The position numbers and the translations under genes were made by a program. 64,000 nt of DNA, taken from Aplysia californica. Lineage: Eukaryota. The notes under the pieces are model-generated. The model searched no databases, was not told the origin of the DNA, and was given only the letters and a program-made list of their open reading frames with translations. The DNA is taken from positions 560,381 through 624,380 of the forward strand of contig NW_004797466.1 in assembly GCF_000002075.1 (NCBI RefSeq), written 5' to 3'. Numbering within the stretch: the stretch's first letter is position 1; each line of letters opens with the position of its first letter. This document shows positions 19,218-63,968 of this stretch, in pieces.

Positions 19218-22200
19218 TCAGGAAGATTCTTGTTCCAGCAAGGCGAAAGCTTCTTCTATCATTGCAGTAGCCTGTAGAGAAAACAAAACACTCTTGAGAT
19301 GCATTCTTGTTACCTCAAATTTACACAAACACACCATGTAAAGAGAGCATTTCGGAGCAAGCCAAGTTTCAAACCTCGGTAGCTCACAAGAGACTGCAAT
19401 GACACATTTCGTTGGCCAGCTATTACATTATACCATCCCTCTCCAATAGCCATTATAGTTATTTAGGCACACACTATTTATTCCATCATTGCTGAGCATC
19501 CCAAGAAAATGAGCTGGAAATAATACATATTTATTTATGTACTGCATTTTCACTGTGCAAGTACTGAAAAATCAACACACATATATTATTATACAGGGTA
19601 ATTAAAAAAGAATACGCCAAAATCATCACACAATATTTTAACAACGAAAAACAATAGAAAACTCTTGCTTGGACGCATATTTTGTAACAGATCTTCAAGT
19701 ATTCCTTTTTATGTTTTACAAGTGCTCAATGTGGCCACCACCGGCAGCACGACAGCATCAAGCCAATATAAGAATTCCTTCCAAACACGCCTCAGAATGA
19801 CTCAGGCCACCGTGTTGATTGTAGCTGTTATTCGATCTTTCATGCCATCGATATTTGCTGAAAGTGGTGGAACATAAACTTCATCTTTAGCATACCCCCG
19901 GCAAAAAAATCACACAGAGAGGTCAAGGGATCTGGCAGGCCAACTACAGAGAGTGAGGTCTTTAGCACCTCTCCTACCAATCCACATTTCAATTCAGATA
20001 AGCTCAAACTCAGATGCCAATGGGGAAGTGCTCCATCTTGTAGAAAAATGAAGTCATTTGAATATGCGTACAGTAAAGTGAATAGCCACTTCTTGTGGTG
20101 GTATGTTAAAGACAAAGTTAATGTTTCACCACTTCCAACAAATATCAATGACATAAAAGATTGAATAACAGCTACAATAAACTCGGTGGCCTGAGACATT
20201 CTGAGGCGTGTTTGGGAGGAATTCTGATATCGGCTTGATGATGCTTGTGCTGCCGGTTTTGGTCACATTGAGAACTTGTAAAACTTGAAATAGAAACTTG
20301 AAGGTATATACAACACATGTGTACAAGCTGGAGTTATCTATTGTTTTTTGCTTTTGTAATATCGCTCGATTATTTTGGTGTATTCTTTTGAATCACCTTG
20401 TATTATCCATTTCCTCTTTCTCACTCTCTCCAGGAATCAACCCGGTCACATTTCTTTCCCTAATAAAAAAAAAAGCAAATGATATGCCTGCCCTGTACAG
20501 GGAGAGTTGAAAATAGCAACAAGCCTGATCAAACCAGCAGTCACTTACCCATACAAAGAAAGTTGCAGCACCAGCTGAAATGTCCCTTACATCATCCAGT
20601 TCATACTTTTCCAGAAGTTTCCGAGCCTTCTTGGCAGTTTTTAGTGCCAAAGTTTTCGCATCCAACTCCAGACAGCGTCGTTTAAGGCTCTCCTTCCCTG
20701 TTTTACCCACAAGAGCCTGCACCGCCTTCCAGTCCTACACACAGAGTTTCAGAGTCAGTCATGGGCAAGCCATCCATTTCCGTGATACACATATAGAGGT
20801 GTTAGCTCAATTTTTTGTCAAGGACACACACAAGTTTCCCCTCTCCCCTTCTTTTCAATGATGACAACCGCCTGAATAATTTCCAATATTTTTACCAGTG
20901 TGATCGGGGAACACAGCACATGAAAACATTATTTTATATTAAAATCCTTTCATTGAAATTCAGTTTCAGCAAAGTCCATAGGAAGCAGTGAGTTCTTTTT
21001 TCCCACGTGTGTTATTATCATTATGCCTCTACATCATCAAGACAAAAGTAAAGTACCAGTAACAAAAGAGTCCATCAAAAATTGAAACAAAGTCCCTTTT
21101 TCCTATTTCATGAGTCAGAAACAACATCCCCCCTCCCCTACCCCCAGCAAACTTTTTCTTTTCTTCTGAAAAATTTTTAAAAAGTTGAGGAAGGCAATGT
21201 ACACATGGATTAACCGACTCCAATTCTATAAATACAAATTATTCAGCCAGAATTAAAAAAAACTACCAGCTACTTTACCGCTATTTTAAAAAAAAAGCAG
21301 AAGTCCTTAACTTGCACTACATAGACATGGGTACAACATTTCTCAAAATGAAGACAGGACTAAACATCTTTCATTTTGCATATATTTTCCTTTGCGAACA
21401 CATCTTGCTCCAGCATCATCTCAGAGGAACAATTATTGAAAACAACAGAATCCATCAATCTATAAGCATAAGCTGTCTTTCCATTACTGGTACAACCAGC
21501 AATTGAATATTTCTTTGAGTCAGCTGACTTCTTATTTTGTTTGCTATATAAAGCGACTTGCATGGTATTATACCTTTGTACATGCCATTAAAAAAACCCA
21601 ACAGTCACAGAAAGATAAAAACGGATATCTTCTCTTTCTTTCTTCTAAATTCAACAGGTGGTTATAACAAACAGATATGTCCTCTAAAGCGATACGATCA
21701 ATGATAAGAAACAAAAGTAAATTCGGTGTACTTCTCATCCAATGCAAACTAGGAAATTGAACGAAACAAGGGAAAATGTACTTTCAAAGTTATGGCTCTC
21801 ATTCAGTGCAAAATAATAAATTGAACAAAGCGTGGGAAAATGTATTTTCAAAGCTATGGTTCTTAAAGACATCGTTCAAAATTCACATTTAACTTTTGTT
21901 TCCACATTACCTTTGTTTCTCCTTCCTTATGCCCCAGCAGCAAAAATGTGGCAGTCATGACTGTGTGCACAATGAGCGGAGGGCTCGTGTAGCTCCGGAT
22001 TTCAGCCACAGTCGACTGCTTCAGCTCCAAGATCTCGTGTCTGATCCTCTCGAGCCGTCTGAGATGTGACAGAAGTTTGTTCGCATCCATCATCTCACTA
22101 GCGAGCTCCACCTCTAAGCCGTGTTTGCGTACAAAAGTCATAGCTCTGTCCAGTTCCTCAATTTCCCTCTTTGTCATGGCTTTCTGGAGACCTACATGGA

Positions 22201-25200
22201 AAATACAAGACAAAAGTTGCCTATTGTAGACTAACACCTTTCCAGTGTGAATTAAATTTACTAACATATTATATCTCTGGGCAGAGATTAGTTCACAAAT
22301 GGAACAAACATACACTGGAAAAAGACAAAAATGTCTTTAAAAAAGGATAATAATTATAATAGGTCTCATCACAAGCCACGATGATGCAGTTTCTGATTAC
22401 AGGAGATGCTTTTTGTGAGAATTAGGAAAGTGTCGGCAAACATAGCTTTCAGCTAGAAGCCAAAATATAAGATGAGGTCTTCCCGAGTTGAGCGTGAATT
22501 TTTATACCAGGGGGTTCCCCAAAATTTTATGTCTGTTTTCTTATAGTCATTAATTGACAAAAGGTCTGTAATATTTTATTTTGATTTATTTTTTAAAAAC
22601 TTCATATTCTAAAATAATTATTTTTTCGCCTTTGAAAGTTCTGCCATTTCATGGTTTTTACACTTAATCTCACTTCGTTTTCCTATCTTTAAACTTTACA
22701 AAGTGATTATTTAATCTAATTGTAATCATTTTTGGGCTGTTTTATATGTACAACTTTAAAACTCAGTTTGCTGGAAGCCAAAGTAGGCATCAAGATTTTT
22801 TTAAAATATACATGTTGAAACTCTGAAACATCAACTCTAGAACAGATATCTTTGAAATTGAAAATGCAGAACATTGAGGACAGTCCCTGCAATGTGATGG
22901 TCGCAAAAAGTCAAAATGTCCTGACACCACCACATTCCACATTCTTGCAGATATCTTCTCAAACGTTTATGTAATTCCTTTTATTTTCTCATTTCTTCCA
23001 TCGTTATGACTTCTTAAAGGATCGTTTTGGTAACATATTTGTATGCTATCAGCATATTTCCCTCCTGTGCTTTTTCTCTCATATCAAACCCTTTCTATTT
23101 ACTTTTTTCATTACACTGAATGGGTAAGAAACATAATTTTTAAAAACAACAACAACATAAAGCCCATATACCTTCTTTAGCTGACAACTGCCTCAAAAGG
23201 CGTTTTGCCTTCTCATAGTCCATGTCATCATCTGAGAGTTTAGCGTTCTTAAACTCTGTCATTGAGAACTCAAGCTGGTACTTGTCCTTTGCCTTGATGG
23301 CAACCTTCAATTGGTAGCGGATGCGCTTGTTTTTGTTATCTGTTGAATATAAAAGCAACCAAAAAATAAAAAGTACATGTAATTTTATTCACACACACTT
23401 TACTTTAAAGAAAGTGAATTGTCAAGTCTGGTCTAAAAATCGTCTTCAAATTTTTTTGACAAAAAGTTCTTTATCAAAAATGTCTTCCACTGTGTAGATA
23501 AGTATGAAGGAATGTATCTGCCATTCTGAAATTAAAGCTTCTGGCAACCATACTACATTTTTAAAACAAAAAGAAAATTTTGTAATACATTTTAGAAAAT
23601 TGTAAGGTTTTGTTTAGCTATTTGGCTCACCTAAGTAACAGGTGAACTCTTTCTGTACTGGGAAAATTCAATGTTTGTATCATGCAAAATACCCTGATAT
23701 TGCTTTAGCAGAAGCTACTAATACAGTTTTGCAAATACAAGTCCTACCTACTCTGACAACAACACTGACAAGGACCACCACCACAACTGTTATTACCATT
23801 GTCACTACCACTGCCGCCATCTCAACCAATGCCATTACCACTACTGCATCTAATACTAATCTTGCTGCAACTTGCACTTCCACTGCCAATTCAGCTGCCA
23901 TTCCCATTGTCATTCCCACTGTCACTATCACCACCACTTCAGCTGCCATTCTCATTGTCATTCCCATTGTCACTAGAGTTGTTCCCACATCCGATCCAGA
24001 CATTGGGGATTGCCTTGTTAGCGGGACAACTTCCTGGGCCTTCGGCATATTTTGGTAGGGTGGCCAGTTCCTTTCCACGCCGCCTCTACTTCCCCAACTC
24101 GAAATCAGGTACCCATTACTGCTGGGTGGGCAGGAGCGGACGAAAAAAATCTGTGTCCGAACCGAGGCTCGAACCCAGACTTTCCGCTTCGGAGACGAGT
24201 GCATTAACCGCTCCGCCACTGCACTCTCTTACCACTGTCACTTCCACTGTCAAAACTACTACTACTGCCACTACTCCACCTCCCATTGTCACTGCCACTA
24301 TCACTTCAGCAGTCCCTCGTGCAGCCACTATGACTACTATGACCACTACTATAACAATTAGTATTACACCCTCTCTCAGCACTTTATTACGTGTGACTTC
24401 TAGAGGGACTTTATTCTTTACCTTTCTTTAGCTTCCTCTGCCTTTCTTCTTCCTCTTCTATCATCTTTCTCTTCTTTTCATCTGCTCCATCCTTTTCACT
24501 CTCAAGTTTAGCCAGTTCATTGTCAGCATCTTTCTCAGCCTTTTCTGCTGCCTGGAGGAAGAGAAAAAATGTACACTCCAAACTCATCCAGTCTGTATGT
24601 TTTAGAATGCCACTGAGCCCACTGATGTACAGTGGAGTCCATCTATATTGGACTCACGGGGGCAATTTTATGTTTTTGGGCTACTAAAAGTATTTCCATG
24701 TAAAAAGTGAAGGAAATAGCAAAAATTACAGCATAACATTTTCAATTTCAAGGATGATTAGGGTTAGCATCACGGGGACACAATTTGCGATGCCTATCCC
24801 CACCCTGCTTTGTCTGCTATGTCATGACAAATCTGATTTTGACACGAGTTATCTGGCGTTCATGTCACAAGCACATATGTCAATGTCATTGCCAGCTCCC
24901 TCTCCCTCCTCTCCACTCCCCCCGTCCCCAATTCCTATCATTCTTGGATGACGCGATGTAGAATGAAAACACAATCAAGTGTTGGAGTCAACATGAAATT
25001 AATCAAAGAAGTACAATCCATGACTGAACATTTTTTATGGAATGTAAAACCTGTCATGGATGCAGCCTTGTCCTTGTAGAAATGCCAGCATAGATTCACA
25101 AGAACAATTTTGTGGTTAATTTATTTACATTTCTCTCGGAATTATGCTCTGCCTAGCCACAAATGGCTTCATAATAAGATTAACCCATGTCACAGTGCGT

Positions 25201-28200
25201 TCATATGGTCACAAAAATAAGGAAAGAGTAACAAACCATGTCTCGGAAGAATTAATTTTCACCCATATTTATTACAATAATAATAATAATAATAATAATG
25301 ATAAATAGCATTTGTATAGCCCATAACCCCGCTCTACAGCAAGCTCTATGTGCTTTTATTTACATACCATTACCCCAGCAGACCATAGAACACTCAGAAA
25401 CATTCTCAGCTTCCCGGGAAGCATACAGTGCAAGCAGCTGCTTAAGCGTTCACACACTATTATATAGTGATAATGTGAAACTGAGACAGGAAATATTACA
25501 TCCCAGTGACAGAATAAAAGAACCTTTCTCGATGCACACTTACAAAAGAGCTTTTCTACCTTGTACTTATAATATGCACACGTATAATCTATACAAGCAA
25601 ACGAAAAATAATGATGATACGTCAGAAGAAGGAAAATCTACATCCCTTTACAATTATACTGTTTTCAGTTTATACAACATTGGTATAAAAATAATTCGTT
25701 AAAAGCTCCATCACATCCATGGACATACAGACATTTTTGTGAATTGTATGTGCATTATTGTGTATTTGGCTCACCTCAGTAATAGGTAGACCCCTTCTGA
25801 AGAGGGATACAGTCTTTTGTATTCATGAATGTTCTAGATTGGAATCCTAGAGGGATCTTAGTTTATTTTAGTGCTTTCTATGGGAATGTTTCCTCTAAGC
25901 CTGCTACCCTGTTGGGGCTCAAAAAGTTCTATTCTATGTCAGCCAAGGTACTTAACTTCGCTATTTTCAGTAAACAAAACATGCCATGTACAGAAAGTAA
26001 GAGACAAGGGTAAGTTTTGCTCCTTGGCAGGTTGAACACCTCTTTCAAGGCAGAAAAGTGATATAGAAAGCAGGACTTCCAGGATAAATGCCCATCTCCA
26101 ATAAAACTGATCGAACAGATTGAGAGCCATAATAACTCTGGAAACAACCTAACTTCAGGAATGTCCTGTTCTGGATTTGAACTTGGGCCATCCATTTTGC
26201 AGTTGACTGTGATGATACCAAGAGAGATAATGGCACACCTGTTTCGCTTATTGATAGACTTTTTGAAAATGTACATTTTTTGTGCCTTTAATCAATCTTT
26301 TTCAGTAAAATCCTCACAGAAATGTGTTTTTATAAGGATATAAAAAGGTGTTAAGCCAAAAAAAGACAATTAGAAAAAAATTGCCCAACGGGCAGAAAAA
26401 CTTCAATTTCTTTGATTTCATTATTTTGACGAGCGCCTGATTTCACCACGATGCCTTACATTTATCTTCCTGCATTTTACATGAGCATAATGCATCAAGG
26501 TGTACGTGTGAAGGTGATATTAAACAATATGGACAAGCTGGAATGCAAAACACATAAAAAACTGTAGTAATATTCTGGGTCAAGGGTTCACAAGTTTGTA
26601 ACTGTGTCTCTGGCCTTGATGGGAAAAGTAAACATCAGAGGTCAGAGGGTATATAATCTCATGACAGCTGCTGCATGGGTGGGATGAGGTACTCTTAAAC
26701 CTTTATGTTTTGTATGCTATGTATTTAACACAAAAATGGGTTAAACATAGCAATTCTTAAAAAATCCAACCAGACGTCCTTTAAAAACATTGATTTAGGT
26801 TTTTATTTGACATTTTAAAAATAATTTATTTATGGATGTATCAAAAGATGTTCTGACCATAAGATATGCTTGGAAAAATTACCAAGTGGCCATTTTCTTT
26901 TGATATGAAAACTGTAACAATGAATTACGATGAACCATTTCTTTCTAAGCACCTCAAAGATCGCACCAGAACAAACTTGTACCGTTAGGGAACTGATAAA
27001 CACCATAACTATCACATTGTCAAATATTTTGTTGCTGTTTCAAGAGAAATGAGGAACTCCATGTGATCCTGTTTTTAGGGAAAGAGAGTAAAACCATTGG
27101 TGATACCACTTTTCTAGTAGCAACAATGATTTGGATGTTGAGCTCCCTTGTAGCGTAAGAAAAGATTAATCATTCGCTATCATCATCATCAATGCCTTTC
27201 ACCCCAGGCAGGGTATAGGCCGCATACAAGCTCCTTCCATTTATCTCTATCCTGGATCATTCTTCCTAGCTTGTTCTAAGTGAGCTTCATCTCTCTCATG
27301 TCTCTTTCCACACATCTCCTCCATGTCTCTCGAGGCCTACCCCTGCCTCGTGCTCCCTGTGGGTTCCATTGCAGTGACTGTCTTGTGGTGTTTCCGCTGG
27401 GCTTTCTGAAGGTGTGTCCCATCCAACGCCACTTTCTTAGTCTTATTTCTACTTCTATATCCTTTTGTCCTGCCCTTTCCCATAGCTGTTCATTTCTTAT
27501 TCTATCTTAATATTCGCTATACCTACCACATTTCATAGTGAGATCTGTACAGCTACGATCACAGTCGAACCCTCTCTAACACCGACCTATATAATACAAA
27601 CATCTGCCACTTATCGTATTTTCCTCCATTTCGTATTTTTTACATTGTAATGACACTATGTAAGACGTTCACTTTTCTCTTCGACAAGGGAAGGCCATCT
27701 TACAGTTCAGTTTCGACTTTACTTCCCCAGGTGTATTGGGTAGAATTTCTCAGTTTCAATTCTTGTGTGGTTCTTTTTTCCCCTGGTAATGGCTGCTAAT
27801 GCAAATACTTTTTAAATGTATGAATTAACAAAATTTTAAAGCCAGAATCTCTATATTCTGCCACAATATTATGAATACTGCTAGGGCTTACCTCTTTGTG
27901 GAGCTCTGCATCTTTGTATAAATTTTCATCTGCCTCTCTCTTTCTCCTTTCTTCCTCTTCCAGTCTCTTCAAACGTTCCCTCTCCTTGATAAACAAATGG
28001 AGTATAAAATCAATGGAAAAAGCTACTCACAGTTATACAAAGAATACCATGGAACTTAATTTTTTTCACAGCTTCTGAAAAAGTCGTTTTCGTGAAAAAA
28101 TCAAGCCAAGATCAAACCTTAAATCTGCAAATCACTAATATCCACCCTTGATAATTATTTTGAAAATACAACAAAAACAAATACAACTACTTAAAATCTA

Positions 28201-31200
28201 ACTTGGAAGAGTGCTCCATTCCTAAGTCAGTCATAATATTCTTATTCATATATTTCATATATATATTCCCATAAGCAGTCAACATGAAAGCATACAAGAC
28301 TTTGCCACCACTTTTTGGATTAACTAATGCCTTCCATTCTACCCTTCCTTGAAACTACAATGTAGTTAAGTGTTCCTTTGATGTCATGCATATTTGCATT
28401 GTCAATGTCTCAAAAAAACCCTGTTGGTACCCATTTTCATCAGAGCAGAAGCAGAAAAGAGTGTGTGTGTGTGTATCTTACTAAAAATACAACATTCAAA
28501 CATTCAAACTACGACAAGGTTAAGAACTGAACCTGTAACTCTACAAGCTTTAATAGATGGTTCCATAAATATGAAGACAGTACAAACATAATATTGTACA
28601 ATACCCACATCTCAAAAAAATTACGTTTTGATAAATCTCAAAAACATTTTTTTACCTCTTCATCCTCCTTCAACTTCCTCTCAGCATTCTCCTTTTCTCT
28701 AATTGCTGTTGATAAAAGATAAAAATTACTGGTGAGTTACGATCACCTGACTAAACAGGAAAGGTTTGGTACTATTCGAGTATAAACCAAAAAGAAATTA
28801 AAATTACATATCATTCTATTGTAACCCCCCCCCCCATTCCCCCAAATCCCACCACAGACAAGAAAACACTGTATTGAGAAGAGTAAAATATAAATGAGTA
28901 ATCAGTCTACTAGGCATCCTAGAGAAAAGAGGGATTGGTGAGTTCTTTCAAACGAAACAGGAAACAGATGGGTAATGTCAGGAGACAAAAAAAACATAGC
29001 TGATTGTCAAGGCATTTTGTTCTTCTCTATGTAGATCAAACACAGCTGGTCTGACATTTTTCCCTCCCCCCCCCTCTCATTTTTTCCCCTTTTGGTTGCG
29101 TTTTCTTTCTCACTGGTACTCCACAAATGCTTTCATTCAAGAATTGTTCTCCCTGTTTGAAACACTAAATGGCAAAAAAAAATGTCCTCAATGTTCTCTG
29201 CAGCAAAGGGCAAGCAAGCACAATGCGGAAGTTCATTATCACAGCTGAACTCTAGCATGGAATGATGTTTACAACTACATGTCACTCAGCTGACAGGCTA
29301 CATAACAACAGTTGCCCATGTCACAACAGGACCCAGACACAAATCAACATGCCCCCAGTTTGTGACCCCACCAATAAGGCTGTAGTCATCCCTTACCACA
29401 CGCACACAGCAATCACTAGAGAGAATAGAGAGTGCAAAGTCCAAGTACATAAATAATATAACTATAAAGCCTGCATACTTTTTTATTCCACAAAAGACAA
29501 CCTTCGCACAATATCAAAACTTCAGGTCATTCGGTATCTGTCAGGGTAATTTTTTATGTGCATTGGTGGAAAATTTAATATGAGCACGTTTTTTTTTCAT
29601 GATAAGAGAAAAAACATTTTTGTTCCTTTTTTTTAAAATATGGGGTTTTATGGCGCTCGCAACTGCATAAGGTCATATGAGCACGCCGTGTTCCTCTATG
29701 TTTCAAAACAAACCAAACAAAATTTAAAAATTTGACCGCTTTTCTAAAAATTGGGGTACAAAGAGTAGATATATTTTTCATCTGAAGTAGGATTACTATT
29801 GGCACAGAGCATAAGAATGAGCATGGCATAGGTGCAACCAGGAGCGCATAGATAAACATTTATTACAGAATTCAATTATGTCTGGGAAAATGACCCTGTC
29901 AAATTATAACAATAGCCTCAATTCTATTACTCCTAATGAAAATCAAACAAATTTTATAATATTATCCAAACAACTGATTTATCTAAAATATATGACCTAA
30001 CCTGTATTTTATTCTCGATAAAATTAGCACATAGTTATAAAAGAATCAATGCCAATTAGTTACTTTCTTTCGGCATTTTTAATGCAGTGAACATGCAGGA
30101 ACAACAAATACTCATAAACAGAAGGGCAAATGAAATGCATGGGCAAAACACTCAATTCATGGAATAGTACGACAATGCTTCCTACGTCATACATTGATGT
30201 TGTGGACGAAACCTTTTCACCCTGGCCCAGGCACATTTTAGCAAACATTTAACTCCACACATAGATAGAACATCATAACATGACAACCTCGCCCCAAAAC
30301 AGCAAACAAACAAAAAAGAGAAAACAATGACCAGATCATTAAGCTTAACTTCCGGCTCTACGCCACAAATTCGCAAACATCTGTCACAGTGAGCTACACT
30401 GACCGCAATACGGAAATAATAATGACATTATTTTCTCTCGACCAAGTTCTGTGCATCACTTCAGCTTTTGAAAATATCCCACCCCCCAAATTATCCAAAT
30501 TGTGTCGATATACGCTTGCCTTGAAACATTTACAACCACTAGCAATTATTTATTACCCAACAGAATTCCACTAATGTTCTGGGTTTTCGAGTAAACAAGC
30601 AGGATTATTTCTCCCCTGACAATAAAGTTGAATGAGAACGATTTTGTCCTTTCTCTCAATTTGCATTATAAATTATAAAGCACTTTCATTCAAGTATTGT
30701 TGTTCATCACGACGAACTATTGAAGTTTAGATTATTTTATAACTAGGAGTTGTGTGGGTTGGGGGATCCAATGTGTGACAGGAACTAGGGTATCCTGATC
30801 CAGGTAACAAAAGGTCTTGCGATGCAAGTGTGTTTGATGGGAGGTGTGTCAGTGGGGGGGGGGGGTAGAAGAACTTAACTCTGAAGGAAGATTCACACTA
30901 CACTGAACTCATGACAGAATTTGGAATTTAGCGAGATTATGGATGAAAATCGAAACACCATCGGAAAAACAGAAAAACAACAAACCAGAAAACTGAGAGA
31001 AAGACAAACATAAATGGGTCAGCGGTCTCAGCCTGTATGGACCTGCTCAATATCCAAGAACACATAGGCTCATTACTCAGATGATTTTACAACTAACAAA
31101 GGCCCATGTGAGAGGACTTTATTTTATTCGCCAGTAGCAGGAAGTGAACTCATTAGAAGATTTATACATTTACTGAGCCTTTAAATGTATAATGCACTGA

Positions 31201-33233
31201 GCTTTTGTATTAGGCATTCCTTTTCCATAGCTATGGACTTTGTAACCATTAACAAAAAAAACCCCAGATACTATGACCTTAATTGCAGCCAGTTACATTT
31301 CAGAGAGACATTATGGCTCCAGTTAAGGACACAGCAACTTTCCATTAAATAATCTCATGAAATAGTTGTTTGTTTCACAACAAAGTTATCTAATACATCA
31401 CAGATATACACAAATTCTTTGCACACAGGAGTGAGTGTCGGGGTCAATGCGGAATGAGCATGAAGAAGCCATGGGAATCATCATAAGACCAGTATGTTTC
31501 CATCTCCTTCCAATTCAGTACTTATTCCCCAATTGCAAGCTTAAATAAGAGATACCCAGGGTCAAAACTAAAGGGATTTTAAACACAACACCATGTGACA
31601 TGCCATCAATGGAGGAAGTGAGGTCACTGTGAAGGTCTCAACAAATGCTCCACTCAAAAAAAAATGTTTACAGAACATTGGTTTACCAGTTTACCTTCAC
31701 CTCAAAAAAGAAAGAGTTTGTTTCCTATAGCAAAGAAAGGAGAGAAAATCAGACATGTTTTATTCTTCAGCACACACTATCAATATACAATATCAACTAA
31801 AATATTCATCATTGCAAGTGGAAAGAAACCTGACATGCCTTGAAGAAAGAGAGTTTTGTAAACGTTACCCCACTGCTAGCTGCCATAAAAAGATTGAACT
31901 CACGGGCTAGAGCTTAGATGTAAAGTCATAAGAACTCACAGATATTATGTATGGGCAGAGAACTGCAAGATGAAGGTATTTCATTATATTCAGAGGTTTA
32001 GAATTACATTTTGCAATGCTTCCTCTTTTTATCATGTATCTTACGATAAATCTACTCCTGCTGAACAATAAGATCACCCAGTTTTGGTTTCAAGGGAAAT
32101 GACACTGAACTGAAATATCTATACATATATATATATAATGTATGAAAAGTGTGTGTTTGTGTGCGTTTGGGTGTCGAAGACAGCCACACATCATCAAAGA
32201 GAAAGGACGCTTTCTTTGAAAGATGAAGATCATGAACAGTATCATTACAAAATAGAGAAAAACACAAGATGAGGGGTGAGTGTAAAGTGGTTGTTTGTGT
32301 AGGTAATTTTCTTAGACAGCAATTAGAACAAGTCCTTCTGTACATAAATATAAAGTAGCTTCAATAAAACTGTGGGAAGAATGATTCAACTTGTAAACGT
32401 AGATACAATTGAAAATGAAAGTTAGTCAAAAGTCAAATGCTTGTAAGAGTACTGTAATGACTAAGCACTCAACATAAATCAGAACATACCTTCTTCTCTT
32501 TCCCTTCGAAGTCTTTCCTCTTCTGCTTTCTTGTTTTCCTGAGAAAAAAATATTTCAAAGAATAGCAAGGTCAAGAAATATTCCAGCATTTGAGGAGAAA
32601 GAAAAAGCAAGGCTCAAACCTTGCACACAGAGGTCATGACTGATTCCTTCTCATGGATGATATTTTGAAAAGCATTTCCATATTTTTGTAGGGATGTGTC
32701 CTTTACAGCCTAGACTGACCATTTCGGATGTGGTTGAAACAGTCCACTTCCAAAATGTCCTAAATAGCTAAAATAGCAATTTTAAATATTATCTTTACTG
32801 CATAATGAGTATGAACATTTTTTTACTAAAGGCAAGCAAAAATTAAGATAAATGCAGTGTCGATTTTATGTAAAATAGAATAGATCTTAAACTTCTACGA
32901 TCGAAAGAACTAAACATTGAAAGGACAACGTCCGTACAAGAAGAGATAAACACATACCTTACCGATACCACTTATAAAGAAATAACACTTTCAGTTTTAT
33001 AACAACAACTATGCTAGTTACAAATACACAGTATCATACCAATCCAAATACACTAGCATGCACACCAAACACCCCAACACATGTATACACACACAAATAC
33101 TAACACAACTAAAACACACACAAAAGCAAATATGCACATATGTACACAAACACTTTCAAACATACACACCTCACACACACAACTTGCACACATACACCAC
33201 CCATGCACACACACATACACATCAGGTCACACA

Positions 33234-33301
<68 letters not shown>

Positions 33302-35977
33302 AGCTCATATCACAGATCAGATCATATAAAATCCCTTTAAAGTATGTGAACTTACAAGTTCTTCCAACTTTTTGGCAGCTTCTCGTTCTTGCTGTCTTCT
33401 CATCCTCTCTGCCTTAGCAGCAGCTGCCTCCTGTTCTTTGCGTTTTTGTCGCTCTAAACACAAAGAATACATTCACATATTGCACACATAACAAGAATAT
33501 ACCATAATGCTTATCTGTTCAATAAAAAGTTTAAAAACCCTTTTAAAAAAACCCAACAAAGTAAAATATGCAGAAAGATGAGTTGGTAAACAGAAATTTT
33601 TTCTTGAATATTCGTTCTTGAAAAGAAATAGAGTCACTTTAACACTTTGAATCATATTATCTCCACATGCACTAATAAAATAAAAAAATAGAGCAGGATC
33701 AATAAAGTGCTGCATAAATTAAGTCTTAAAAGATCCAAACGTTTTACCTTTCTGTAATCGTTCTCTTTCTCGTTCCTCTTCCTCCAAGATCTGTTTGCTT
33801 GGAATGTCACAAAGCATCACTTCTATCTCTGCAAACGTCACACCACTGCCTGGTACAGCTCGTGATTTTACAAAGTTGCTCCATTTCCCAGGCGAGAAGA
33901 ATCTTCCATGGACAGACTGGACAAACCATCTATGGACAAAATTTTGTTTTCTGGGATATTCTGATATATTTCCACATAGAAACAGAAGTGTTTTGATATA
34001 GAAAGTATACATTTCCACATTTGATGCGATAAAAGTAATCAAAAGTAGCAAATTCTTCAGTTCAATATGGGAATGATGGAAACTGATATTTTACTTCAGC
34101 TGAACAGAACATCTCAAGCCCAGTTTTATGTAAGGGGTTTAATCTAAAATACAGCTCACCTTCCCTATGAGACACACATCTATATAAACAAAAAATAAAA
34201 ACATCAGAAATGCTCAGAGCTTCAAAACTAAATTAGTGAAAATATATTTTAATAAAGTCAACAAGAGAATGCATATTCAATTTTGAAAAAATACAAATGT
34301 TACAGACAGCAATAGCTATTGAGAGCATGAGTACTTGAGATTATGCAAGATGGAATTAAGCTTTAAATAAACCAGTGTAAATGAGCGCGAGAATTTCTTT
34401 TGTCCATTAGAGAACTGTTGGAATTAAGTGATGATGTTCAACTTTCTACCATCTTTGATACATCTGGCTGATAACTGTATCACAAGATGGCAAAGTGCAG
34501 ACAGATTACAAGTATCACATTTCCGTGTATGAATATGGCTCTTTTAAGCTGTTCACATGATTCTATAGTAAAATGAACTTCATGGTTCACTATAATCATT
34601 TTTTAGGGGTTTTTTGTACCAAGTTAACACAAAATTTTCACCTGAAAACAGCTGAATTGTTTCATTTTGAAGTAAATGAAGTGCATAATTTTCTATTAGG
34701 TAAAAAACATAAAGCATAGCATTTGTATCAAACCACGTACTTTGCTTGAGCCACAGTGATGCTTTGTTTCTGTTCTCGGTCCAAAAAGGAGAATTCCCAT
34801 CGGAAATCTTGAATAAGAAAATAGCGACGATCCATCTCTTGAATAAGATCATACAACTCACTGATATGGCAGTTGTTTGTAGCACAGATGTACTTTACAG
34901 ATGCAAAAACCTGAAGAAAAAAAACAAAAAACAAACATCTCTTAGCATTTTCAAAACTTGAAAACACATGTTATCGATTCTGTTATGTTACTCAAGTTCA
35001 TAAAGCATGTTAGATTTATACAATTTTTCTCCCTTGACTGTACCCACCACACATCACACCCTTCATCTGCTCAGCTTGTGATTTAAAGACAGCGGACTCT
35101 TTTCTCCACATAGCAGGATCTCACATGATTTTTTTTCTTCAGAAAGACGTTAATAAACTATTTTTCTAATTTTACCCACAGGTAGATTTTGCTTTCCATT
35201 TTATGTGAAAGGGCATAGATGTAATTCACTTACAATAGACTATCATGTTACTCAGAATATGATCCCGTACCAACAATTTTGTTTCATGTTATAAATACAA
35301 TGAAGGACAGGCTCTTACGCGATTAAAGTAAGGGCCATGCTTCCAAAAACATTCAATCACAGGACACCAGTCATCTCAACTTTTAATGGTGAAAAAAAAA
35401 ATTGTAGATTCTACAGAGTGAGAGTGTGTAGCTTATATCTTAGAAAGTAGAAGTGAACAAGATAGAAGAGAGTATTTGTAGGCTAAGAATAGTTTCTTCT
35501 CTATTTTGTGCCTTTTTTGAAAAGCTACTGAAACAAGCTAGGCTGCCTTTAGCACCTATGCTTTTTCTTGTCAATGCTTCATTTTTTTTCTCTCTGGGTG
35601 TCTATGCATCTAGTTCATTGTCAGCACACTCAATTCTTCCATGGACATATTAGAATTTACTTGTAAATTTTCATATATACCCCAGTCTTCTCTTTGTTCA
35701 TCTTTCTTTCTGTCCATCTAAAAATCTCGAATCTCTTTCCCCAATTCCCAGTCCTAATAGCTCTTGTTCTTGCCATAGTTGTTTACTAATAATGGACATA
35801 TCTTACCTGTGGTAGACTTATTCCTCCCATTCTCAGATCTCCATGCAATATTTGGACTTGTATTGGTGTAAGTTCTTCAACTCCATTTGCATCGTACTGA
35901 GCAAAAACTTGTTCAAGAACTTTCTTTTTCTCAGCTCCATCAAAATTTTGGGATGTGTTCCTGAGAACCTCGGTCAT
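19218..35977 (-). CDS. Uncharacterised 543-aa protein: EF-hand-like N-terminus, E/K/R-rich helical linker, C-terminal dynein MTBD-like domain
   Basis: Twelve phase-consistent GT-AG exons: 35977-35807, 34910-34741, 33929-33748, 33453-33356, 32538-32490, 28705-28656, 27984-27892, 24551-24422, 23339-23172, 22191-21911, 20734-20549, 19271-19218 (1632 nt). Runs from MTEVLRN... to ...EQESS*. EF-like loops FAQYDANGVEEL and FSFLDREQKQSI. C-terminus EIRSYTSPP...LLLGHKEGETKDWK...SAGAATFFVW. Confidence 0.9.
19594..20400 (-). mobile_element. Decayed Tc1/mariner (maT/DD37D-like) derivative with ~280-bp inverted arms
   Basis: TA|CAGGGTAATTAAAAAAGAATAC ... GTATTCTTTTGAATCACCTTG|TA. Minus-strand transposase relics DFIFLQDGALPHWH, WPARS.DL..CDFF, YAKDEVYVPP and GGHIEHL*. 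Confidence 0.85.
23975..24228 (-). mobile_element. tRNA-derived SINE (Arg-like head) with a conserved central domain
   Basis: A-box TGGCGGAGCGG and B-box GGTTCGAGCC, then CCACCCAGCAGTAATGGGTACCTG and a GGGAACAACTCTA tail. The acceptor stem does not pair. Confidence 0.8.
27181..27511 (-). mobile_element. 5'-truncated RTE-clade LINE 3' end
   Basis: Minus strand encodes RKWRWIGHTLRKP...WNPQGARGRGRPRETWRR...QDRDKW, followed by a (GAT)n tail. TSD ATTCGCTAT at 27172-27180 and 27512-27520. Confidence 0.9.
33060..33299. repeat. Degenerate (CA)n followed by (CT)n microsatellite
   Basis: Directly visible. Confidence 0.9.
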
Positions 35978-36202
35978 GACGGTTATCTGGAGAACATGGG
36001 ACACAATGTTTTCAATCATGAAACAAAACTACAGATAGTGAATTACCTAATTTTGAGCTTATTCTGTAGCAATACTACAGCTTTTCTAAAAATATTACTT
36101 TTAATTTAGAAACCACACAGATGTAAAGACCACTACTTCTATAGAAAAATGCTTTTTATTTTTTGAAAATCGGTCAACAAATTTTTGATTTGTTACGGCT
36201 GT

Positions 36203-36263
36203 TTTAGTTTAGCCTTAGTAAGGTTTTATGGTACTCGCAACTGCATAAGGACATATGAGCGCC
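36203..36263 (-). mobile_element. 3'-end fragment of the ~180-bp retroposon
   Basis: CTCGCAACTGCATAAGGACATATGAGCGCC. A second such fragment lies at about 29640-29682. Confidence 0.7.
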
Positions 36264-40900: not shown

Positions 40901-43900
40901 CCACCAGTCAGGCTAAACACCATTTATGTTCATATGAAAACACATTTCCATGTGAATTTTACTGAAAAACCTTGTTTAAAGGCACAAAGTATGTAATTTT
41001 CAGTTTTCAAGGACTCTTAAGCTATTGAAGTTACCAAACTTTGGAGGCCATTTCCTCATTAGTTAAACCACTGAAACCAGGCTGCCCCACCTTCTTCAAT
41101 CGCAAATATCTCGACTTCTTTTCAAACTAAATGGATATTTTTTTCACTGAAAGCAAGGAAAATGAATAAACTTTCAGATGATATCAATAATTCCACATGC
41201 CCAAAAATTGACGAACACCTGATTCCACCACATCTTGACACGTATAAATTATATTCTGTCTTCTCAAAATGTTTCTCAAAGGCACAGTCAACTGCCTCAC
41301 TTTCTATGGAAAGGGATACATGTTTTCTGCCAGTGAAGATGGGACCATCTGCATGTGGAAGTCCAAGAACTGGGAGCTGTTGAGGACTCTAAAAGGCCAT
41401 AAGTATGTCCAGACAAATTTATTACTGCTACTGGGCTTAAGGTTCTAAAGTTAACTGTTAGAGTTTAATAGTTTTTAGTTTCGTATCAATTTCAGCCCGC
41501 ACTATTACTATTACCAAGTTTGTCTCAGTTGCCCCTTAAGGCTGAGCATGCAAAAGTATGTCACATATACTATAACAGTTATCTTCTGTTGTAGTAGAGT
41601 CCATGAACTCAAGTCGTAAACCTATTCCCATGGGTGGTTGGCGGGTGCTCAGGTGTGGTTTGCTTCTTCTTTCCTATCAAACATCTATCGTCCTTGTCTC
41701 CCCTTCTTCTTTTTTATGTTTGTTACTCTCTTTTAACACCTCTTATCTTCTGGCGCTCATATGACCTTATGCAGTTGCGAGCGCCTTAAAACCTCCACTA
41801 AAACTATAACCTATTCCCTGGGTTGTAGCAGCAAGTTTTAATTGAAAGTATGCATACGTTAACATTTCCTTCACAAAAAAGGACAGATTTCCTGCTACAA
41901 GCTTGTATTATTATAATGTACCAAAATGTTTAGAAAAGAATGAAGATTTGATTATGTAACATGAGAACACACTTGCAGTACAGGCAAGAATATATTTATG
42001 ATAAGCAATGAAAACAAGTGGAAAAGAAGAATGATACTGCGACTATTCAGTACGAATGTCGACTTTTTAAGGGTTAAAAAGGAAGTAAGCGTCTTGTTTT
42101 ACTAAATCAGCTTGTACCATTATGGCAAGTGAATGTTTTGATCTTCAACTTTGCACACCAAATAAATGTATTGATTGTAGTGGACCATACTATGGGGGTA
42201 TTTGACTTTATAAAAAGTTCATAATAGTGTTGATGTTTTGACCTTTGTGTGAACTTAAAAGTTTTGGCTAAATTTTAATGCTCAGAAATGGTCACCTCTG
42301 AAAGGACATGAAGAAGGATGTTAAGACATTGCATAGTTTTCTTTTTTACATGATAGATAACTGTGTTGTATCTTCTCATGTTTAGGTATATACCCTTGAT
42401 GTCAGATTTGGTAACTTTAGTCGTCTGTGTACCAATTATTGAACACCTTTTGATGTGAGATTCCACACCTTCTCTTTAAGCTAAAGACACATCAGTACTG
42501 TGTGTGAACCATTATTTGTAGAAACAGGTGAAGAGAGTAGTTGACAAGATAGAAGGTTTTATCTTCATTATTCTGTCTGTAGTTTATTTTGCAAGCTTTT
42601 GCTTTTATATCCTGATTTTGGTTTCCCCACAGAGCTAAAGTTATGACAGTGGGGATTCATCCAACGGGAAAGTTGGGCTTTTCTGCTGGCAGTGACAAAA
42701 GCCTTCTCACATGGGATCTACTGACTGGGAAACTGGCTTTTCAAAGAAAGCTTCAGGATGGTAGGAACTAATTAAGGGCAAAACTTTTTTAGCATTCAGC
42801 TTGTACGAATGAAAGGAAATTTACCGTGCTCTGCTTAAAGCTAAAAATATGTGTGGTATAATTCTCTAGAATTTAATTTCTCCTTTTGATATACAGCTTG
42901 AATGGAATCATAGAGATTAGTTAACCATGGGGTATAATGCTCATCTCTTATGACAAAGGACTGAATTTGATTTCCTGTTTATACATGCGCAGTTAGTAGA
43001 CTTTGTTGCTTTCTCCATAGGTAGGTAGGATTTAGCACTTTGATAAGAACTAAGCACTTGAAGGCTCTCGTGACACCTTGGTTATTGACAGTCGAAGACT
43101 TGGAGTCTGTCCAGTATGGCTCCCAAAGAAAAAGTTTTGGGTATTTTTCTGCCAAAGTTATAAACCAAGTCTAGACAGTATATTGCCTGCTCAGTGTAGC
43201 ACTCCGCTATCTGTCATTTTGAAAAGTGATGTATGATGGAGTCTTACACTGAGCAGTCGATACAAATGGTTTTATTGAACTTTTGTAAAAGGTGTTTTGT
43301 TGCCTTAAGACCACACTCTACTTCTTAGCACCAAAATCTACGGTTAAGTTATTTTTACTTGTTTTCTTCTAATTTTCTCAAAGTATTCCATTTAAGGATT
43401 AAAAATATTCAGTTTTGGGAATCATTATTAGTTACATAATCATAGAAATGGTAAATTAGTGTGAGATCGGGCTATCTGAAGGACCATTTTCAAAAGCTAA
43501 AAACTCAAAATCCATTCATGCTATTTATGAACTAATTTCATATTTGTAATCTGCACACAAATGTTTAGAAAATGACGCTAGCTTTTCTTGAAATTGTAAA
43601 TATTAATAATTTTATTACGTTTAAAAAACTTGCATGTTAGTGAATGGCAAAAATAGTCAAAAACGCAAAGTCAAAAAATCAATTAAAAACTTTTTTGTCC
43701 TAAGATTAGAAAAAGCAAGCCTCATTTATTTGGAACTGCATGGTGCAGTTACCCTCCAAATTTCATGTCTTTCTCTTTAATTATTTTTTAGTTTTTAGCT
43801 TTTGAAGCCGAGAAATGAATATTTTGAGGAAAGGAGCAAAAACATCTAAAAATTGCTCTAAAGCATTGTATTGGCTCACAATGTTACAAAATTTATGGAG

Positions 43901-52452: not shown

Positions 52453-52592
52453 TTTTAGTAGAGGTTTTACGGCGCTTGCAACGGCATAAGGTCATATGAG
52501 CACCAGAAGATTAGAGGAGTTACAAGAGAGTAACAAACATAAAAAAGAAGGAGGGGAGATAAGGACTATAGATGTTTGATAGGAAAGAAGAA
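52453..52592 (-). mobile_element. 5'-truncated copy of the ~180-bp retroposon
   Basis: Reverse complement of the 3' 140 bp of 41630-41807. Confidence 0.8.
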
Positions 52593-63489: not shown

Positions 63490-63968
63490 CAGTACAGTCT
63501 CTCTATAACGACATTGTTGGTATATAGAGAGTTGTCATTATAGAGAGGCAACTAAAATATTACTAAGTGGGTGGTTGGTGGGTGCTCTGGTGTGGTTTGC
63601 TCTTTCTTTTCTTTCTAACATCTATAGTCCTTATCTCCCCTTCTTCTTTTTTATGTTTGTTACTCTCTTGTAACACCTCTAATCTTCTGGCGCTCATATG
63701 ACCTTACNNNNNNNNNNNNNNNNNNNNNNNNNNNNNNNNNNNNNNNNNNNNNNNNNNNNNNNNNNNNNNNNNNNNNNNNNNNNNNNNNNNNNNNNNNNNN
63801 NNNNNNNCTCTCTTGTAACACCTCTAATCATCTGGCACTCATATGACCTTATGCAGTTGCGAGCGCCGTAAAACCTCTACTAAAACAAAACTAAAATATT
63901 ACTATTTATATATAAGGAAAACCATGTCGCTATACAGAGGATGTCGTTATATCGAAGAGGCTGCACTG
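63490..63968. mobile_element. Tigger/pogo-like MITE with a nested retroposon
   Basis: TA|CAGTACAGTCTCTCTATAACGACAT ... ATGTCGTTATATCGAAGAGGCTGCACTG|TA, interrupted at 63566-63888. Confidence 0.7.
63566..63888 (+). mobile_element. ~180-bp SINE-like retroposon copy (contains a 100-N gap with duplicated edges)
   Basis: 16-bp TSD AACTAAAATATTACTA at 63550-63565 and 63889-63904. Confidence 0.85.

What the first reader, a model, noticed from the sequence alone, without database searches (positions are those of the whole stretch)
19218..35977. Candidate Ca2+-linked microtubule tether: EF-hands + charged single alpha-helix + MTBD-like tip
Seen: the N-terminal ~160 aa has two EF-hand-like loops (DANGVEEL, DREQKQSI; both degenerate). 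About 150 aa of almost pure E/K/R/A follows (EEEERERERLQKERQKRKEQEAAAAKAERMRRQQERE...), then a helical region and the MTBD-like domain. Established: ER/K-rich tracts form rigid single alpha-helix spacers, and dynein MTBD affinity is normally set by stalk coiled-coil registry driven by the AAA ring. Inference: a motor-independent, possibly calcium-modulated microtubule binder or dynein-site competitor, plausibly ciliary or sperm-related. I do not recognise a named gene with this architecture.
Basis: partly seen in the sequence, partly recalled or inferred. Interest (0 to 1): 0.82.

Follow-up and report, generated by a model that had tools for sequence, protein, structure and literature searches.

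The report
Motor-less dynein microtubule-binding domain protein
This Aplysia gene, auto-named "trichohyalin", encodes a conserved but unstudied invertebrate protein that has dynein's microtubule-gripping tip without any motor, joined by a stiff charged helix to a calmodulin-like head that has probably lost calcium binding.

Summary
A 12-exon gene on the minus strand (35977..19218, all GT-AG) translates exactly to XP_035825821.1, "trichohyalin [Aplysia californica]", 543 aa. That name reflects composition only. RNA contigs and reads confirm the three least conserved splice joints.

- **Residues 10-157:** four EF-hand-like helix-loop-helix units, with Z 8-9.5 to calmodulin and penta-EF proteins.
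- **Residues 159-318:** an ER/K-rich tract, 62% E+K+R with a single G/P, typical of a single alpha-helix.
- **Residues 401-543:** a complete dynein microtubule-binding domain (MTBD) fold. It matches mouse dynein-1 MTBD on microtubules at Z 13.9 and rmsd 2.6 Å over 138 aa. In an unbiased search of 48,161 chains, every match at Z 8 or more was a dynein MTBD/stalk or a chain of a microtubule-bound assembly.

The protein ends 17 residues after helix H6. It has no return coiled coil, no AAA ring and no registry control.

Orthologues run from ctenophores and sponges to tunicates. None was seen in vertebrates, arthropods or nematodes. Pfam finds nothing in the Aplysia protein, and I found no paper on the family. 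The same module ends KY-like transglutaminase, CLCA/VWA and CD20-like proteins.

The calcium idea is poorly supported: no orthologue has a canonical loop (0/39, 0/41), and position 12 is mostly Gln. The best reading is a constitutive, calcium-independent microtubule tether. The scan's other note on this window (s1-765302) agrees.

The parts
35807..35977 (-). Exon 1, aa 1-57: start codon and EF-hand-like unit 1 (loop DANGVEELTPIQ, residues 29-40)
   Evidence: 100% tblastn match to P0161; donor GT. Orthologues start at the equivalent Met. An in-frame ATG at 36019 and an acceptor at 35986 leave the 5' UTR structure open.
34741..34910 (-). Exon 2, aa 58-114: EF-like unit 2 with a short Cys-x4-Cys loop (C66, C71), the conserved EMDRRYFL helix, and the EF-like unit 3 loop DREQKQSITVAQ (101-112)
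33748..33929 (-). Exon 3, aa 114-175: exit helix of unit 3 (H121), EF-like unit 4 (RAVPGSGVTFAE, C154), and the start of the ER/K tract
33356..33453 (-). Exon 4, aa 175-207: ER/K tract
   Evidence: joint to exon 5 in RNA contigs of X4, X6 and X8
32490..32538 (-). Exon 5, aa 208-224: ER/K tract (49 nt)
   Evidence: joints 32537/33355 and 28705/32490 in three runs
28656..28705 (-). Exon 6, aa 224-240: ER/K tract (50 nt); AlphaFold confidence is low here (218-232)
27892..27984 (-). Exon 7, aa 241-271: ER/K tract
   Evidence: joint 27983/28655 in raw polyA reads (5 reads, 4 starts) and three contig runs
24422..24551 (-). Exon 8, aa 272-315: ER/K tract
23172..23339 (-). Exon 9, aa 315-371: end of the charged tract and the first conserved helical hairpin (RIRYQLKVAIK...)
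21911..22191 (-). Exon 10, aa 371-464: second helical hairpin, CC1-like helix (401-425), and MTBD helices H1-H2 with invariant E434, S437, Y438, P441
   Evidence: PDB phmmer to the DNAH10 MTBD, E 0.005. 464 relatives in 1.84 billion proteins..
20549..20734 (-). Exon 11, aa 465-526: MTBD helices H3-H6 with invariant W466, G474, T476, G477, K482, R483, S517, A520, F523
19218..19271 (-). Exon 12, aa 527-543 plus stop: short C-terminal helix that takes the place of the first turns of dynein CC2; the protein ends here

Best explanation
The gene encodes a non-motor microtubule-associated tether. (1) The C-terminal 140 residues fold as a complete dynein microtubule-binding domain: a CC1-like helix, H1-H6 and a 15-residue CC2 stub. 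This fold is shown by prediction and structure comparison. That it docks on the tubulin lattice is inferred. Because there is no long antiparallel stalk and no AAA ring, nothing can shift helix registry. Binding should therefore be constitutive rather than switched by ATP (inferred). (2) The 160-residue ER/K tract forms a single alpha-helix spacer of roughly 24 nm, taking 0.15 nm per residue. Its composition and length class are conserved but its sequence is not. The composition and helix prediction are shown; monomeric stiffness is inferred. (3) The N-terminal 150 residues form a four-unit EF-hand domain whose loops have lost the canonical calcium ligands throughout the family. It most likely acts as a calcium-independent, calmodulin-like clamp for a partner protein (the fold is shown; partner binding is inferred). 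Together these parts would hold a partner a fixed distance from a microtubule. The partner and the cell type are unknown.
For: - **Gene model:** the 12 exons translate exactly to P0161. RNA joints confirm the weakly conserved middle exons, and a 3206-nt contig has offsets that fit the whole CDS. Contigs of 2-3 kb from other species encode whole orthologues.
- **MTBD fold:** AlphaFold without templates, on family-only alignments, gives pLDDT 86 for the whole protein and 95 for a 212-aa module. Matches are 6rzb_C Z 13.9, rmsd 2.6 Å over 138 of 149 aa; DNAH7 6rza_X Z 13.4; 5ayh_A Z 17.2, rmsd 1.7 Å over 123 aa. In the search of 48,161 chains, all eight matches at Z 8 or more are dynein MTBD/stalk entries or chains of microtubule-bound assemblies, and unrelated folds reach at most 7.9.
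- **Sequence profile:** DNAH6 MTBD E 5e-6, a Chlamydomonas chain of 4191 aa (8glv_Fm, AAA+ ATPase domain-containing protein) E 8e-6, yeast dynein MTBD E 3e-5. The Oscarella orthologue passes the Pfam PF12777 cut-off.
- **Selection:** 14 of the 20 invariant columns lie in residues 414-523, within the CC1-like helix and MTBD core. The core has a fixed length of 101 aa in most orthologues and net positive charge in 39/43. Three of the four orthologues whose core is not basic carry strongly basic tails of +11 to +15.
- **Precedent:** chain 9ya2_L, most likely Toxoplasma ICMAP2, is a non-dynein protein seen bound to intraconoidal microtubules every 8 nm. It matches the module at Z 10.2, rmsd 3.0 Å over 125 aa (PMC12819142).
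- **Established knowledge:** the dynein MTBD is 'permanently primed' and only H1/CC1 move on binding (PMC6629372). Single alpha-helices are E/K/R-rich linkers between functional domains (PMC4183817, PMC5347031).
- **Charged tract:**
- **EF fold and degenerate loops:**
Against: No binding experiment exists for any family member. A shared fold does not prove microtubule binding. The Toxoplasma protein sits between protofilaments, unlike dynein. AlphaFold breaks the charged tract at 217-229, 263-265 and 292-295, so it may be jointed rather than one rod. Dimerisation through the 319-400 helices is not excluded. Ten of 39 orthologues keep Glu at position 12 of loop 1, and some reach Pfam EF-hand scores, so weak or lineage-specific calcium binding is possible. 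No tissue or subcellular data were obtained.
Confidence: 0.55

Rival explanations
1. One reading: a calcium-modulated microtubule binder, or a competitor for dynein's binding site, in which Ca2+ binding to the EF-hands alters tethering.
For: The head has the EF-hand fold. Loop position 1 is Asp in 35/39 and 40/41 orthologues, and position 12 is acidic in 10/39 and 7/41. Some orthologues carry Pfam EF-hand hits. If the MTBD docks as dynein's does, the site would overlap dynein's.
Against: No orthologue has a canonical loop (0/39, 0/41). In Aplysia, loop 1 has Val at position 5, Glu in place of Gly at position 6, and Gln at position 12. Loop 3 has Lys at 5, Gln at 6 and Gln at 12. The unit 2 loop is only 7 residues long, and the unit 4 loop lacks ligands at positions 1, 3 and 5. 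The 24-nm spacer gives no evident route from the head to the tip.
Confidence: 0.12
2. The tether works specifically in motile cilia or sperm flagella, docking on doublet microtubules as a structural or regulatory link. This is a refinement of the best explanation rather than an exclusive alternative.
For: All lineages holding it have ciliated epithelia, larvae or flagellated cells. The best sequence matches are axonemal inner-arm dyneins DNAH6 and DNAH10. One relative with tandem modules carries a Hemingway/CFAP97 domain.
Against: Vertebrates have motile cilia and arthropods have flagellated sperm, yet neither shows an orthologue in these searches. No proteomic or expression link was found. 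The oyster ciliated-cell marker called 'trichohyalin' is a different gene.
Confidence: 0.2
3. The MTBD-like fold has been reused for a ligand other than microtubules, such as another filament, a membrane protein tail or a nucleic acid. On this reading the protein is a general scaffold.
For: The module is attached to very different partners, including KY-like transglutaminases, CLCA/VWA and CD20-like membrane proteins. Sequence identity to dynein MTBDs is only 17-21%.
Against: The whole domain, including the CC1/CC2 stubs, superimposes at 1.7-3.0 Å. The core is basic, with compensating basic tails, which suits acidic tubulin. The only solved non-dynein look-alike is bound to microtubules (PMC12819142).
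Confidence: 0.12
4. A gene-model artefact: the EF-hand exons and the MTBD exons belong to two separate transcripts.
For: Introns of 3.3-3.8 kb with transposon remnants lie in the middle of the gene.
Against: Contigs in three RNA runs join exons 4-5-6-7. Their lengths and offsets (record positions 620-720 for exon 4 in a 3206-nt contig; 510-610 in a 1274-nt contig) fit a continuous CDS from exon 1 into exon 10. The same architecture is found in more than 80 orthologues, several on mRNA-sized contigs.
Confidence: 0.01

Closest known systems
Dynein heavy-chain microtubule-binding domain (Pfam PF12777 'MT'; e.g. PDB 6RZB, 6RZA, 5AYH)
   Same: A six-helix globular domain flanked by CC1 and CC2 helices. 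Shared motifs include E-I-R-x-[YF]-x-x-P-P, D-W, L-K-R-R and S-x-A-A-x-x-x-x-x-W. The structures superimpose at 1.7-3.0 Å with Z 12-17.
   Different: It is not part of a dynein. There is no AAA+ ring, linker or tail. CC2 is cut to about 15 residues and CC1 is preceded by two helical hairpins instead of a long stalk. The module always lies at the extreme C-terminus. Sequence identity is only 17-21%, and the Aplysia protein falls below the Pfam threshold.
Toxoplasma ICMAP2 globular domain on intraconoidal microtubule 1 (PDB 9YA2 chain L; PMC12819142)
   Same: A non-motor protein whose small globular domain, similar in fold at Z 10.2 and rmsd 3.0 Å over 125 aa, binds the outer microtubule surface every 8 nm. 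The rest of the long protein bridges to another structure.
   Different: There is no detectable sequence similarity. It binds as a dimer between protofilaments. It is an apicomplexan protein of 1,678 aa without an EF-hand head or an ER/K tract. I inferred the chain's identity from residue numbers, modelled length and the entry title, not from sequence. The paper's data-availability list, read in order, would assign 9YA2 to ICMT-2.
ER/K single alpha-helix linkers (myosin VI/X, INCENP, drebrin, CAF-1 KER)
   Same: A long tract of E, K, R and A with almost no Gly, Pro or heptad hydrophobics, lying between two functional domains (PMC4183817, PMC5347031). The INCENP single alpha-helix itself binds microtubules (PMC4571873).
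   Different: Nothing has been tested biophysically here, and AlphaFold predicts three breaks. The flanking domains are new for this kind of linker.
Calmodulin-like and penta-EF-hand proteins (calmodulin, calpain PEF domain, sorcin, T. cruzi FCaBP)
   Same: Four helix-loop-helix units in two pairs with short beta-bridges between the loops. Z is 8-9.5, with rmsd 2.0-2.5 Å per pair.
   Different: The loops lack the canonical ligands across the family. Unit 2 has a 7-residue Cys-x4-Cys loop. Conserved H121 and C154 have no counterpart in these proteins.
Trichohyalin (the RefSeq name of the gene product)
   Same: E/R/K/Q-rich low-complexity composition only.
   Different: There is no S100 domain and no Pfam hit of any kind. 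The size, domains and phyletic range all differ. Orthologues carry a dozen other composition-driven names, such as caldesmon-like, vicilin-like and golgin-like.

Membership tests
Dynein heavy chain | A ring of six AAA+ modules with linker and tail, in a protein of about 4000 aa or more | tested here: not met
   The protein has 543 aa. Pfam finds no AAA or DHC domain. The structure shows only EF-like, helical and MTBD parts.
Dynein heavy chain | A long antiparallel CC1/CC2 stalk linking the MTBD to the ring | tested here: not met
   Only 17 residues follow W526 in Aplysia. The conserved helical part of the tail is 12-25 aa across 43 orthologues.
Dynein-type MTBD fold (PF12777 region) | A six-helix bundle H1-H6 between CC1 and CC2 that superimposes on solved MTBDs | tested here: met
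   6rzb_C Z 13.9, rmsd 2.6 Å over 138/149 aa. 5ayh_A Z 17.2, rmsd 1.7 Å over 123 aa. Best fold in an unbiased search of 48,161 chains.
Dynein-type MTBD fold (PF12777 region) | Sequence match to the Pfam model above the gathering score | tested here: inconclusive
   P0161 gets no hit. The Oscarella orthologue scores 26.0 bits against a cut-off of 24, and others score 16-19 bits. The family profile against PDB dyneins gives E 5e-6 to 5e-4.
Dynein-type MTBD fold (PF12777 region) | Binds the microtubule lattice | not testable with these tools
   Indirect support only: a basic core in 39/43 orthologues, compensating basic tails, and a microtubule-bound non-dynein look-alike.
Calcium-binding EF-hand proteins | Paired helix-loop-helix units (the EF-hand fold) | tested here: met
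   Four units at residues 14-154 with pLDDT above 90. Z 8-9.5 to calmodulin, calpain PEF, sorcin and FCaBP. Atlas features point to EF-hand clusters.
Calcium-binding EF-hand proteins | A 12-residue loop D-x-[DNS]-x-[DNSG]-G-x-[ILV]-x-x-x-[ED] supplying the Ca2+ ligands | tested here: not met
   0/39 (loop 1) and 0/41 (loop 3) orthologues fit. Position 12 is Gln in 25/39 and 28/41. Position 5 is Lys in 16/39 and 20/41. The Aplysia loops are DANGVEELTPIQ and DREQKQSITVAQ.
ER/K single alpha-helix (SAH) | A long E/K/R-rich tract with i/i+4 opposite charges, no heptad hydrophobic seam, and predicted helix | tested here: met
   62% E+K+R, 12% hydrophobic, one G/P. The charge pattern is 4.3 sd above shuffles. 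a/d hydrophobic occupancy is 0.12-0.38, against 0.5-0.62 in most windows of the folded C-terminal region. Helices 159-216, 230-262, 266-291 and 296-331.
ER/K single alpha-helix (SAH) | Monomeric, stable helix in solution | not testable with these tools
   This needs CD, AUC or SAXS on the isolated tract.
Trichohyalin / S100 fused-type proteins | An N-terminal S100-type EF-hand pair followed by long Q/E/R repeats; a vertebrate epidermal protein | tested here: not met
   No S_100 or any other Pfam hit. Orthologues occur only in non-vertebrates.

The most novel reading that the evidence does not exclude
The dynein microtubule-binding domain is not exclusive to dynein. In non-vertebrate animals it exists as a free-standing, always C-terminal anchoring module. 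It has been joined to at least four unrelated N-terminal architectures: a pseudo-EF-hand head plus ER/K helix, KY-like transglutaminase plus Ig, CLCA/VWA, and CD20-like membrane proteins. The EF/ER-K/MTBD protein would then be an ancient pan-metazoan microtubule-associated protein, present from ctenophores and sponges onward and lost in vertebrates and ecdysozoans. It would offer a natural 'registry-free' MTBD for studying how dynein grips microtubules.
Probability: 0.5. Interest if true: 0.8.

Novelty: new variant of a known kind. Interest (0 to 1): 0.68.

Why it matters
The dynein MTBD is treated as a part of the motor, with its affinity set by the stalk and the AAA ring. A conserved family that keeps the tip and discards everything else would change that view in three ways. 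It would show the fold works as an autonomous microtubule anchor. It would give a natural minimal construct for studying MTBD-tubulin recognition without registry control. And it would reveal a set of unannotated cytoskeletal linkers in molluscs, echinoderms, amphioxus, cnidarians, sponges and ctenophores that current pipelines mislabel as trichohyalin, caldesmon, golgin or vicilin. It also corrects the annotation of this Aplysia gene and shows that its EF-hands are probably structural, not calcium sensors.

Tried and rejected
- **Exon-by-exon Pfam:** nothing meaningful. Pfam on the full public protein gave nothing even at E 10.
- **PDB phmmer of exon 11 alone:** nothing.
- **Internal duplication of the two helical hairpins (320-372 vs 373-425):** not significant, score 29 against shuffles of 23 ± 4.6. 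Dropped.
- **'GKTGKES' as a P-loop:** rejected. The spacing does not fit a Walker A motif, and the segment lies in the all-helical MTBD-like domain.
- **Literature:** I searched for non-dynein MTBD-like domains and for orthologue gene identifiers and found nothing relevant.
- **Oyster lead:** 'trichohyalin' is a ciliated-cell marker in oyster gastrulae, but the two listed genes whose accessions were shown are other proteins (one shows a troponin-I-type best match), and the orthologue's accessions are absent from the held supplement text.
- **Cilia proteome preprint 10.1101/153437:** no supplements are held.
- **Residue-level mapping of tubulin contacts:** the paper text held gives too few residues. 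Not done.
- **Chain 9fqr_Xl (bovine sperm doublet, Z 10.2):** its identity could not be resolved. It may be a dynein heavy chain deposited with truncated numbering.
- **Rfam on the abundant 39-nt repeat:** no family.

Full report
**How the spliced model was handled.** The gene is spliced, so I sent no joined exon sequence to any search tool. Exons were searched one at a time by reference. Once a public protein identical to the model was found (P0161), all full-length steps used that record. One local script concatenated the twelve exon references only to test identity with P0161.

**Observation.** A search of 1.84 billion proteins with the largest exon (window 21911-22189, minus strand) found 464 relatives at E ≤ 0.001. 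None of the best 150 was dynein-sized, and many were 500-800 aa proteins with the match near their C-terminus. A word search with one of these returned P0161, XP_035825821.1 "trichohyalin [Aplysia californica]", 543 aa. It matches the window at 100% across every exon body, so the window is Aplysia californica.

Public RNA data confirm the three joints with the least cross-species support. Exon 4-5, 5-6 and 6-7 joints appear in contigs of three runs, and the 6-7 joint also appears in raw polyA reads. A 3206-nt contig places exon 4 at its positions 620-720 and exon 7 at 820-912, which fits about 96 nt of 5' UTR plus the model CDS. A 1274-nt contig has offsets that carry it from exon 1 into exon 10. 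That last point is arithmetic, not direct laying. Several orthologues are encoded whole on 2-3 kb contigs from transcript assemblies. The two-transcript objection is effectively excluded.

**Anatomy.** AlphaFold2, run without templates on an alignment of 43 family members and no dyneins, gives mean pLDDT 86.
- **Residues 14-154** form four helix-loop-helix units with short beta-bridges between the loops.
- **Residues 159-331** are long helices with breaks at 217-229, 263-265 and 292-295.
- **Residues 334-393** are two helical hairpins.
- **Residues 401-542** are a long helix, six short helices and a final 25-residue helix.

**The tip is a dynein MTBD.**
- The exon alone hits the DNAH10, DNAH2 and DNAH6 MTBDs and the mouse dynein-1 MTBD at E 0.005-1.
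- The family profile hits the DNAH6 MTBD at E 5e-6 and the yeast dynein MTBD at E 5e-4. The alignment runs from CC1 to just past H6.
- A second profile gives E 8e-6 to 3e-5.
- Structurally, residues ~400-543 superimpose on the microtubule-bound mouse dynein-1 MTBD (6rzb_C: Z 13.9, rmsd 2.6 Å, 138 of 149 residues). They also match DNAH7 (Z 13.4), yeast dynein (Z 12.7-13.2) and Chlamydomonas dynein-c (Z 11.8).
- A natural 212-aa fragment of a relative (P0043) modelled alone reaches pLDDT 95.
- In a search of 48,161 representative chains that does not rely on Foldseek, all eight matches at Z 8 or more were dynein stalk/MTBD entries or chains of microtubule-bound assemblies. The top match was 5ayh_A at Z 17.2 and rmsd 1.7 Å over 123 aa. 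Unrelated helical proteins stopped at Z 7.9.

Pfam does not recognise the Aplysia protein at all. Only the Oscarella orthologue passes the PF12777 cut-off.

**What is missing is as informative.** Only 17 residues follow W526, the Trp at the end of H6. Across 43 orthologues the conserved helical tail is 12-25 residues. It is sometimes followed by a disordered, often basic Ser/Pro-rich extension. There is therefore no return coiled coil, and no AAA ring to drive it. Published cryo-EM shows that H2-H6 of the dynein MTBD barely change on binding. Only H1/CC1 move, to follow stalk registry, and the domain is "permanently primed" (PMC6629372). I infer that this protein binds constitutively.

Indirect support for tubulin as the ligand comes from three observations.
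- The 101-aa core has a fixed length in most orthologues and is net positive in 39 of 43. Two cnidarians and one ctenophore, whose cores are not basic, carry tails of +11 to +15.
- 14 of the 20 invariant columns of the whole protein lie in residues 414-523.
- The one solved non-dynein look-alike found is 9ya2 chain L at Z 10.2. It is most likely Toxoplasma ICMAP2. That protein's globular domain decorates an intraconoidal microtubule every 8 nm, and its loss separates the two microtubules (PMC12819142).

The Toxoplasma paper does not note any dynein resemblance. My chain assignment rests on residue numbering, modelled length and the entry title. The paper's data-availability list, read in order, would assign 9YA2 to ICMT-2, so this point needs checking.

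**The spacer.** Residues 159-318 are 62% E+K+R and 12% hydrophobic, with one Gly/Pro. The opposite-charge i/i+3 and i/i+4 pattern lies 4.3 sd above shuffles. Heptad a/d positions are 0.12-0.38 hydrophobic, against 0.5-0.62 in most windows of the folded C-terminal region. In the family this tract varies from 86 to 310 residues (median 195) and is only 15-44% identical to Aplysia. Its E+K+R content nonetheless stays near 60%. That pattern is typical of ER/K single alpha-helices, which are known linkers between functional domains (PMC4183817, PMC5347031). At 0.15 nm per residue the Aplysia tract would span about 24 nm. Monomeric stiffness is inferred, not shown.

**The head.** The fold is EF-hand. 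Z is 8-9.5 to calmodulin, calpain-3 PEF, sorcin and T. cruzi FCaBP, with rmsd 2.0-2.5 Å per pair, and the protein-atlas features agree. The loops, however, are not calcium loops. In loop 1 and loop 3, none of 39 and none of 41 orthologues fits the canonical pattern. Position 12 is Gln in 25/39 and 28/41, and position 5 is Lys in 16/39 and 20/41. In Aplysia the Gly at position 6 is also lost in both loops. Unit 2 has a 7-residue Cys-x4-Cys loop, and the unit 4 loop has no ligands at positions 1, 3 and 5. From general knowledge, replacing the bidentate Glu at position 12 with Gln disables calmodulin sites. I therefore read the head as a calcium-independent, calmodulin-like binding module. Residual calcium binding in lineages that keep Glu-12, such as some bivalves, sea urchins and hemichordates, is not excluded.

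**Family and range.** Orthologues with the full architecture occur in the following groups:
- gastropods and bivalves;
- a brachiopod, annelids, nemerteans, a bryozoan and an orthonectid;
- hemichordates, echinoderms, amphioxus and tunicates;
- cnidarians, sponges and ctenophores.

No vertebrate, arthropod, nematode or flatworm appeared. This rests on word-limited searches and on the top 150 of the exhaustive search, so it is provisional. All names are composition-driven (trichohyalin, caldesmon, vicilin, golgin, GYF protein and so on).

The module also ends other architectures:
- KY-like transglutaminase plus Ig proteins, in molluscs, Lingula and amphioxus;
- CLCA+VWA proteins in amphioxus, and a VWA protein in Styela;
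- a protein with a weak, sub-threshold CD20-like match in amphioxus;
- one protein in which it occurs in tandem, together with a Hemingway/CFAP97 domain.

The Aplysia genome holds three further loci with the module. I found no paper describing a non-dynein MTBD-like family, and none citing these genes.

**Verdict.** The microtubule-tether idea is the best-supported mechanism. The calcium link is the weak part. The gene itself is already in RefSeq under a misleading name. What is new is the recognition of a motor-less dynein MTBD family. The scan's other note on this window, s1-765302 (a stand-alone MTBD-like module at 19218-22060), describes the same tip and agrees with these tests.

Noticed in passing
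window 29644-29682 (+); also 36222-36260 (+), 41755-41793 (-), 52463-52501 (+), 63837-63875 (-): A 39-nt core (GGTTTTATGGCGCTCGCAACTGCATAAGGTCATATGAGC) occurs five times in the window with at most 3 mismatches. In RNA runs it has enormous summed depth, and the reads continue into unrelated sequence on both sides. It looks like the conserved core of a very abundant interspersed (SINE-like) repeat carried in many transcripts. It matches no Rfam family.
   Followed up: partly
window 19843-20262 (-) and 27279-27506 (-): Transposon remnants lie inside introns of the gene. One is a mariner/Tc1-like open frame (…FLQDGALPHWH…). The other resembles the C-terminal end of a non-LTR retrotransposon ORF (…QWNPQGARGRGRPRETWRR…). 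Both were recognised by eye only.
   Followed up: no
P0161 residues 66, 71, 121, 154 (window exons 2 and 3): The pseudo-EF-hand head has conserved Cys66 (39/43), Cys71 (34/43), His121 (42/43) and Cys154 (43/43). They may form a metal site or a disulfide. Their proximity could not be checked without model coordinates.
   Followed up: partly
Relatives P0001, P0018, P0071, P0075, P0077, P0103, P0117, P0135 (KY-like); P0087, P0098 (CLCA+VWA); P0068 (VWA); P0037 (CD20-like); P0073 (tandem modules + Hemingway/CFAP97): The same MTBD-like module ends several unrelated architectures in molluscs, Lingula, amphioxus and Styela. It behaves as a mobile C-terminal anchoring domain.
   Followed up: partly
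G000 contigs C140:971300-971506, C952:135582-135713, C614:220049-220216 (loci L002-L004): Three further loci in the Aplysia genome encode the first MTBD exon at 41-55% identity. The genes they belong to were not worked out.
   Followed up: no
C-termini of echinoderm and hemichordate orthologues (e.g. P0211, P0212, P0023, P0209): The echinoderm and hemichordate orthologues end in a conserved motif, …K(T/H)(I/E)xxSGxLTITI. It is absent from other phyla and may be a lineage-specific docking signal.
   Followed up: no
PDB 9fqr chain Xl (bovine sperm 96-nm repeat), residues 1326-1491: This chain has 1096 modelled residues and an MTBD-like domain at unusually low residue numbers (Z 10.2 to the module). 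It is either a dynein heavy chain deposited with truncated numbering or a mammalian non-dynein carrier of the fold. Its identity was not resolved.
   Followed up: partly
window 33112-33309 and 1560-1646: Long (GA/TC)n and (CA/TG)n microsatellites flank exon 4's intron and an N-run. They produce spurious 'ERERER' frames that mimic the real ER/K exons in tblastn.
   Followed up: no
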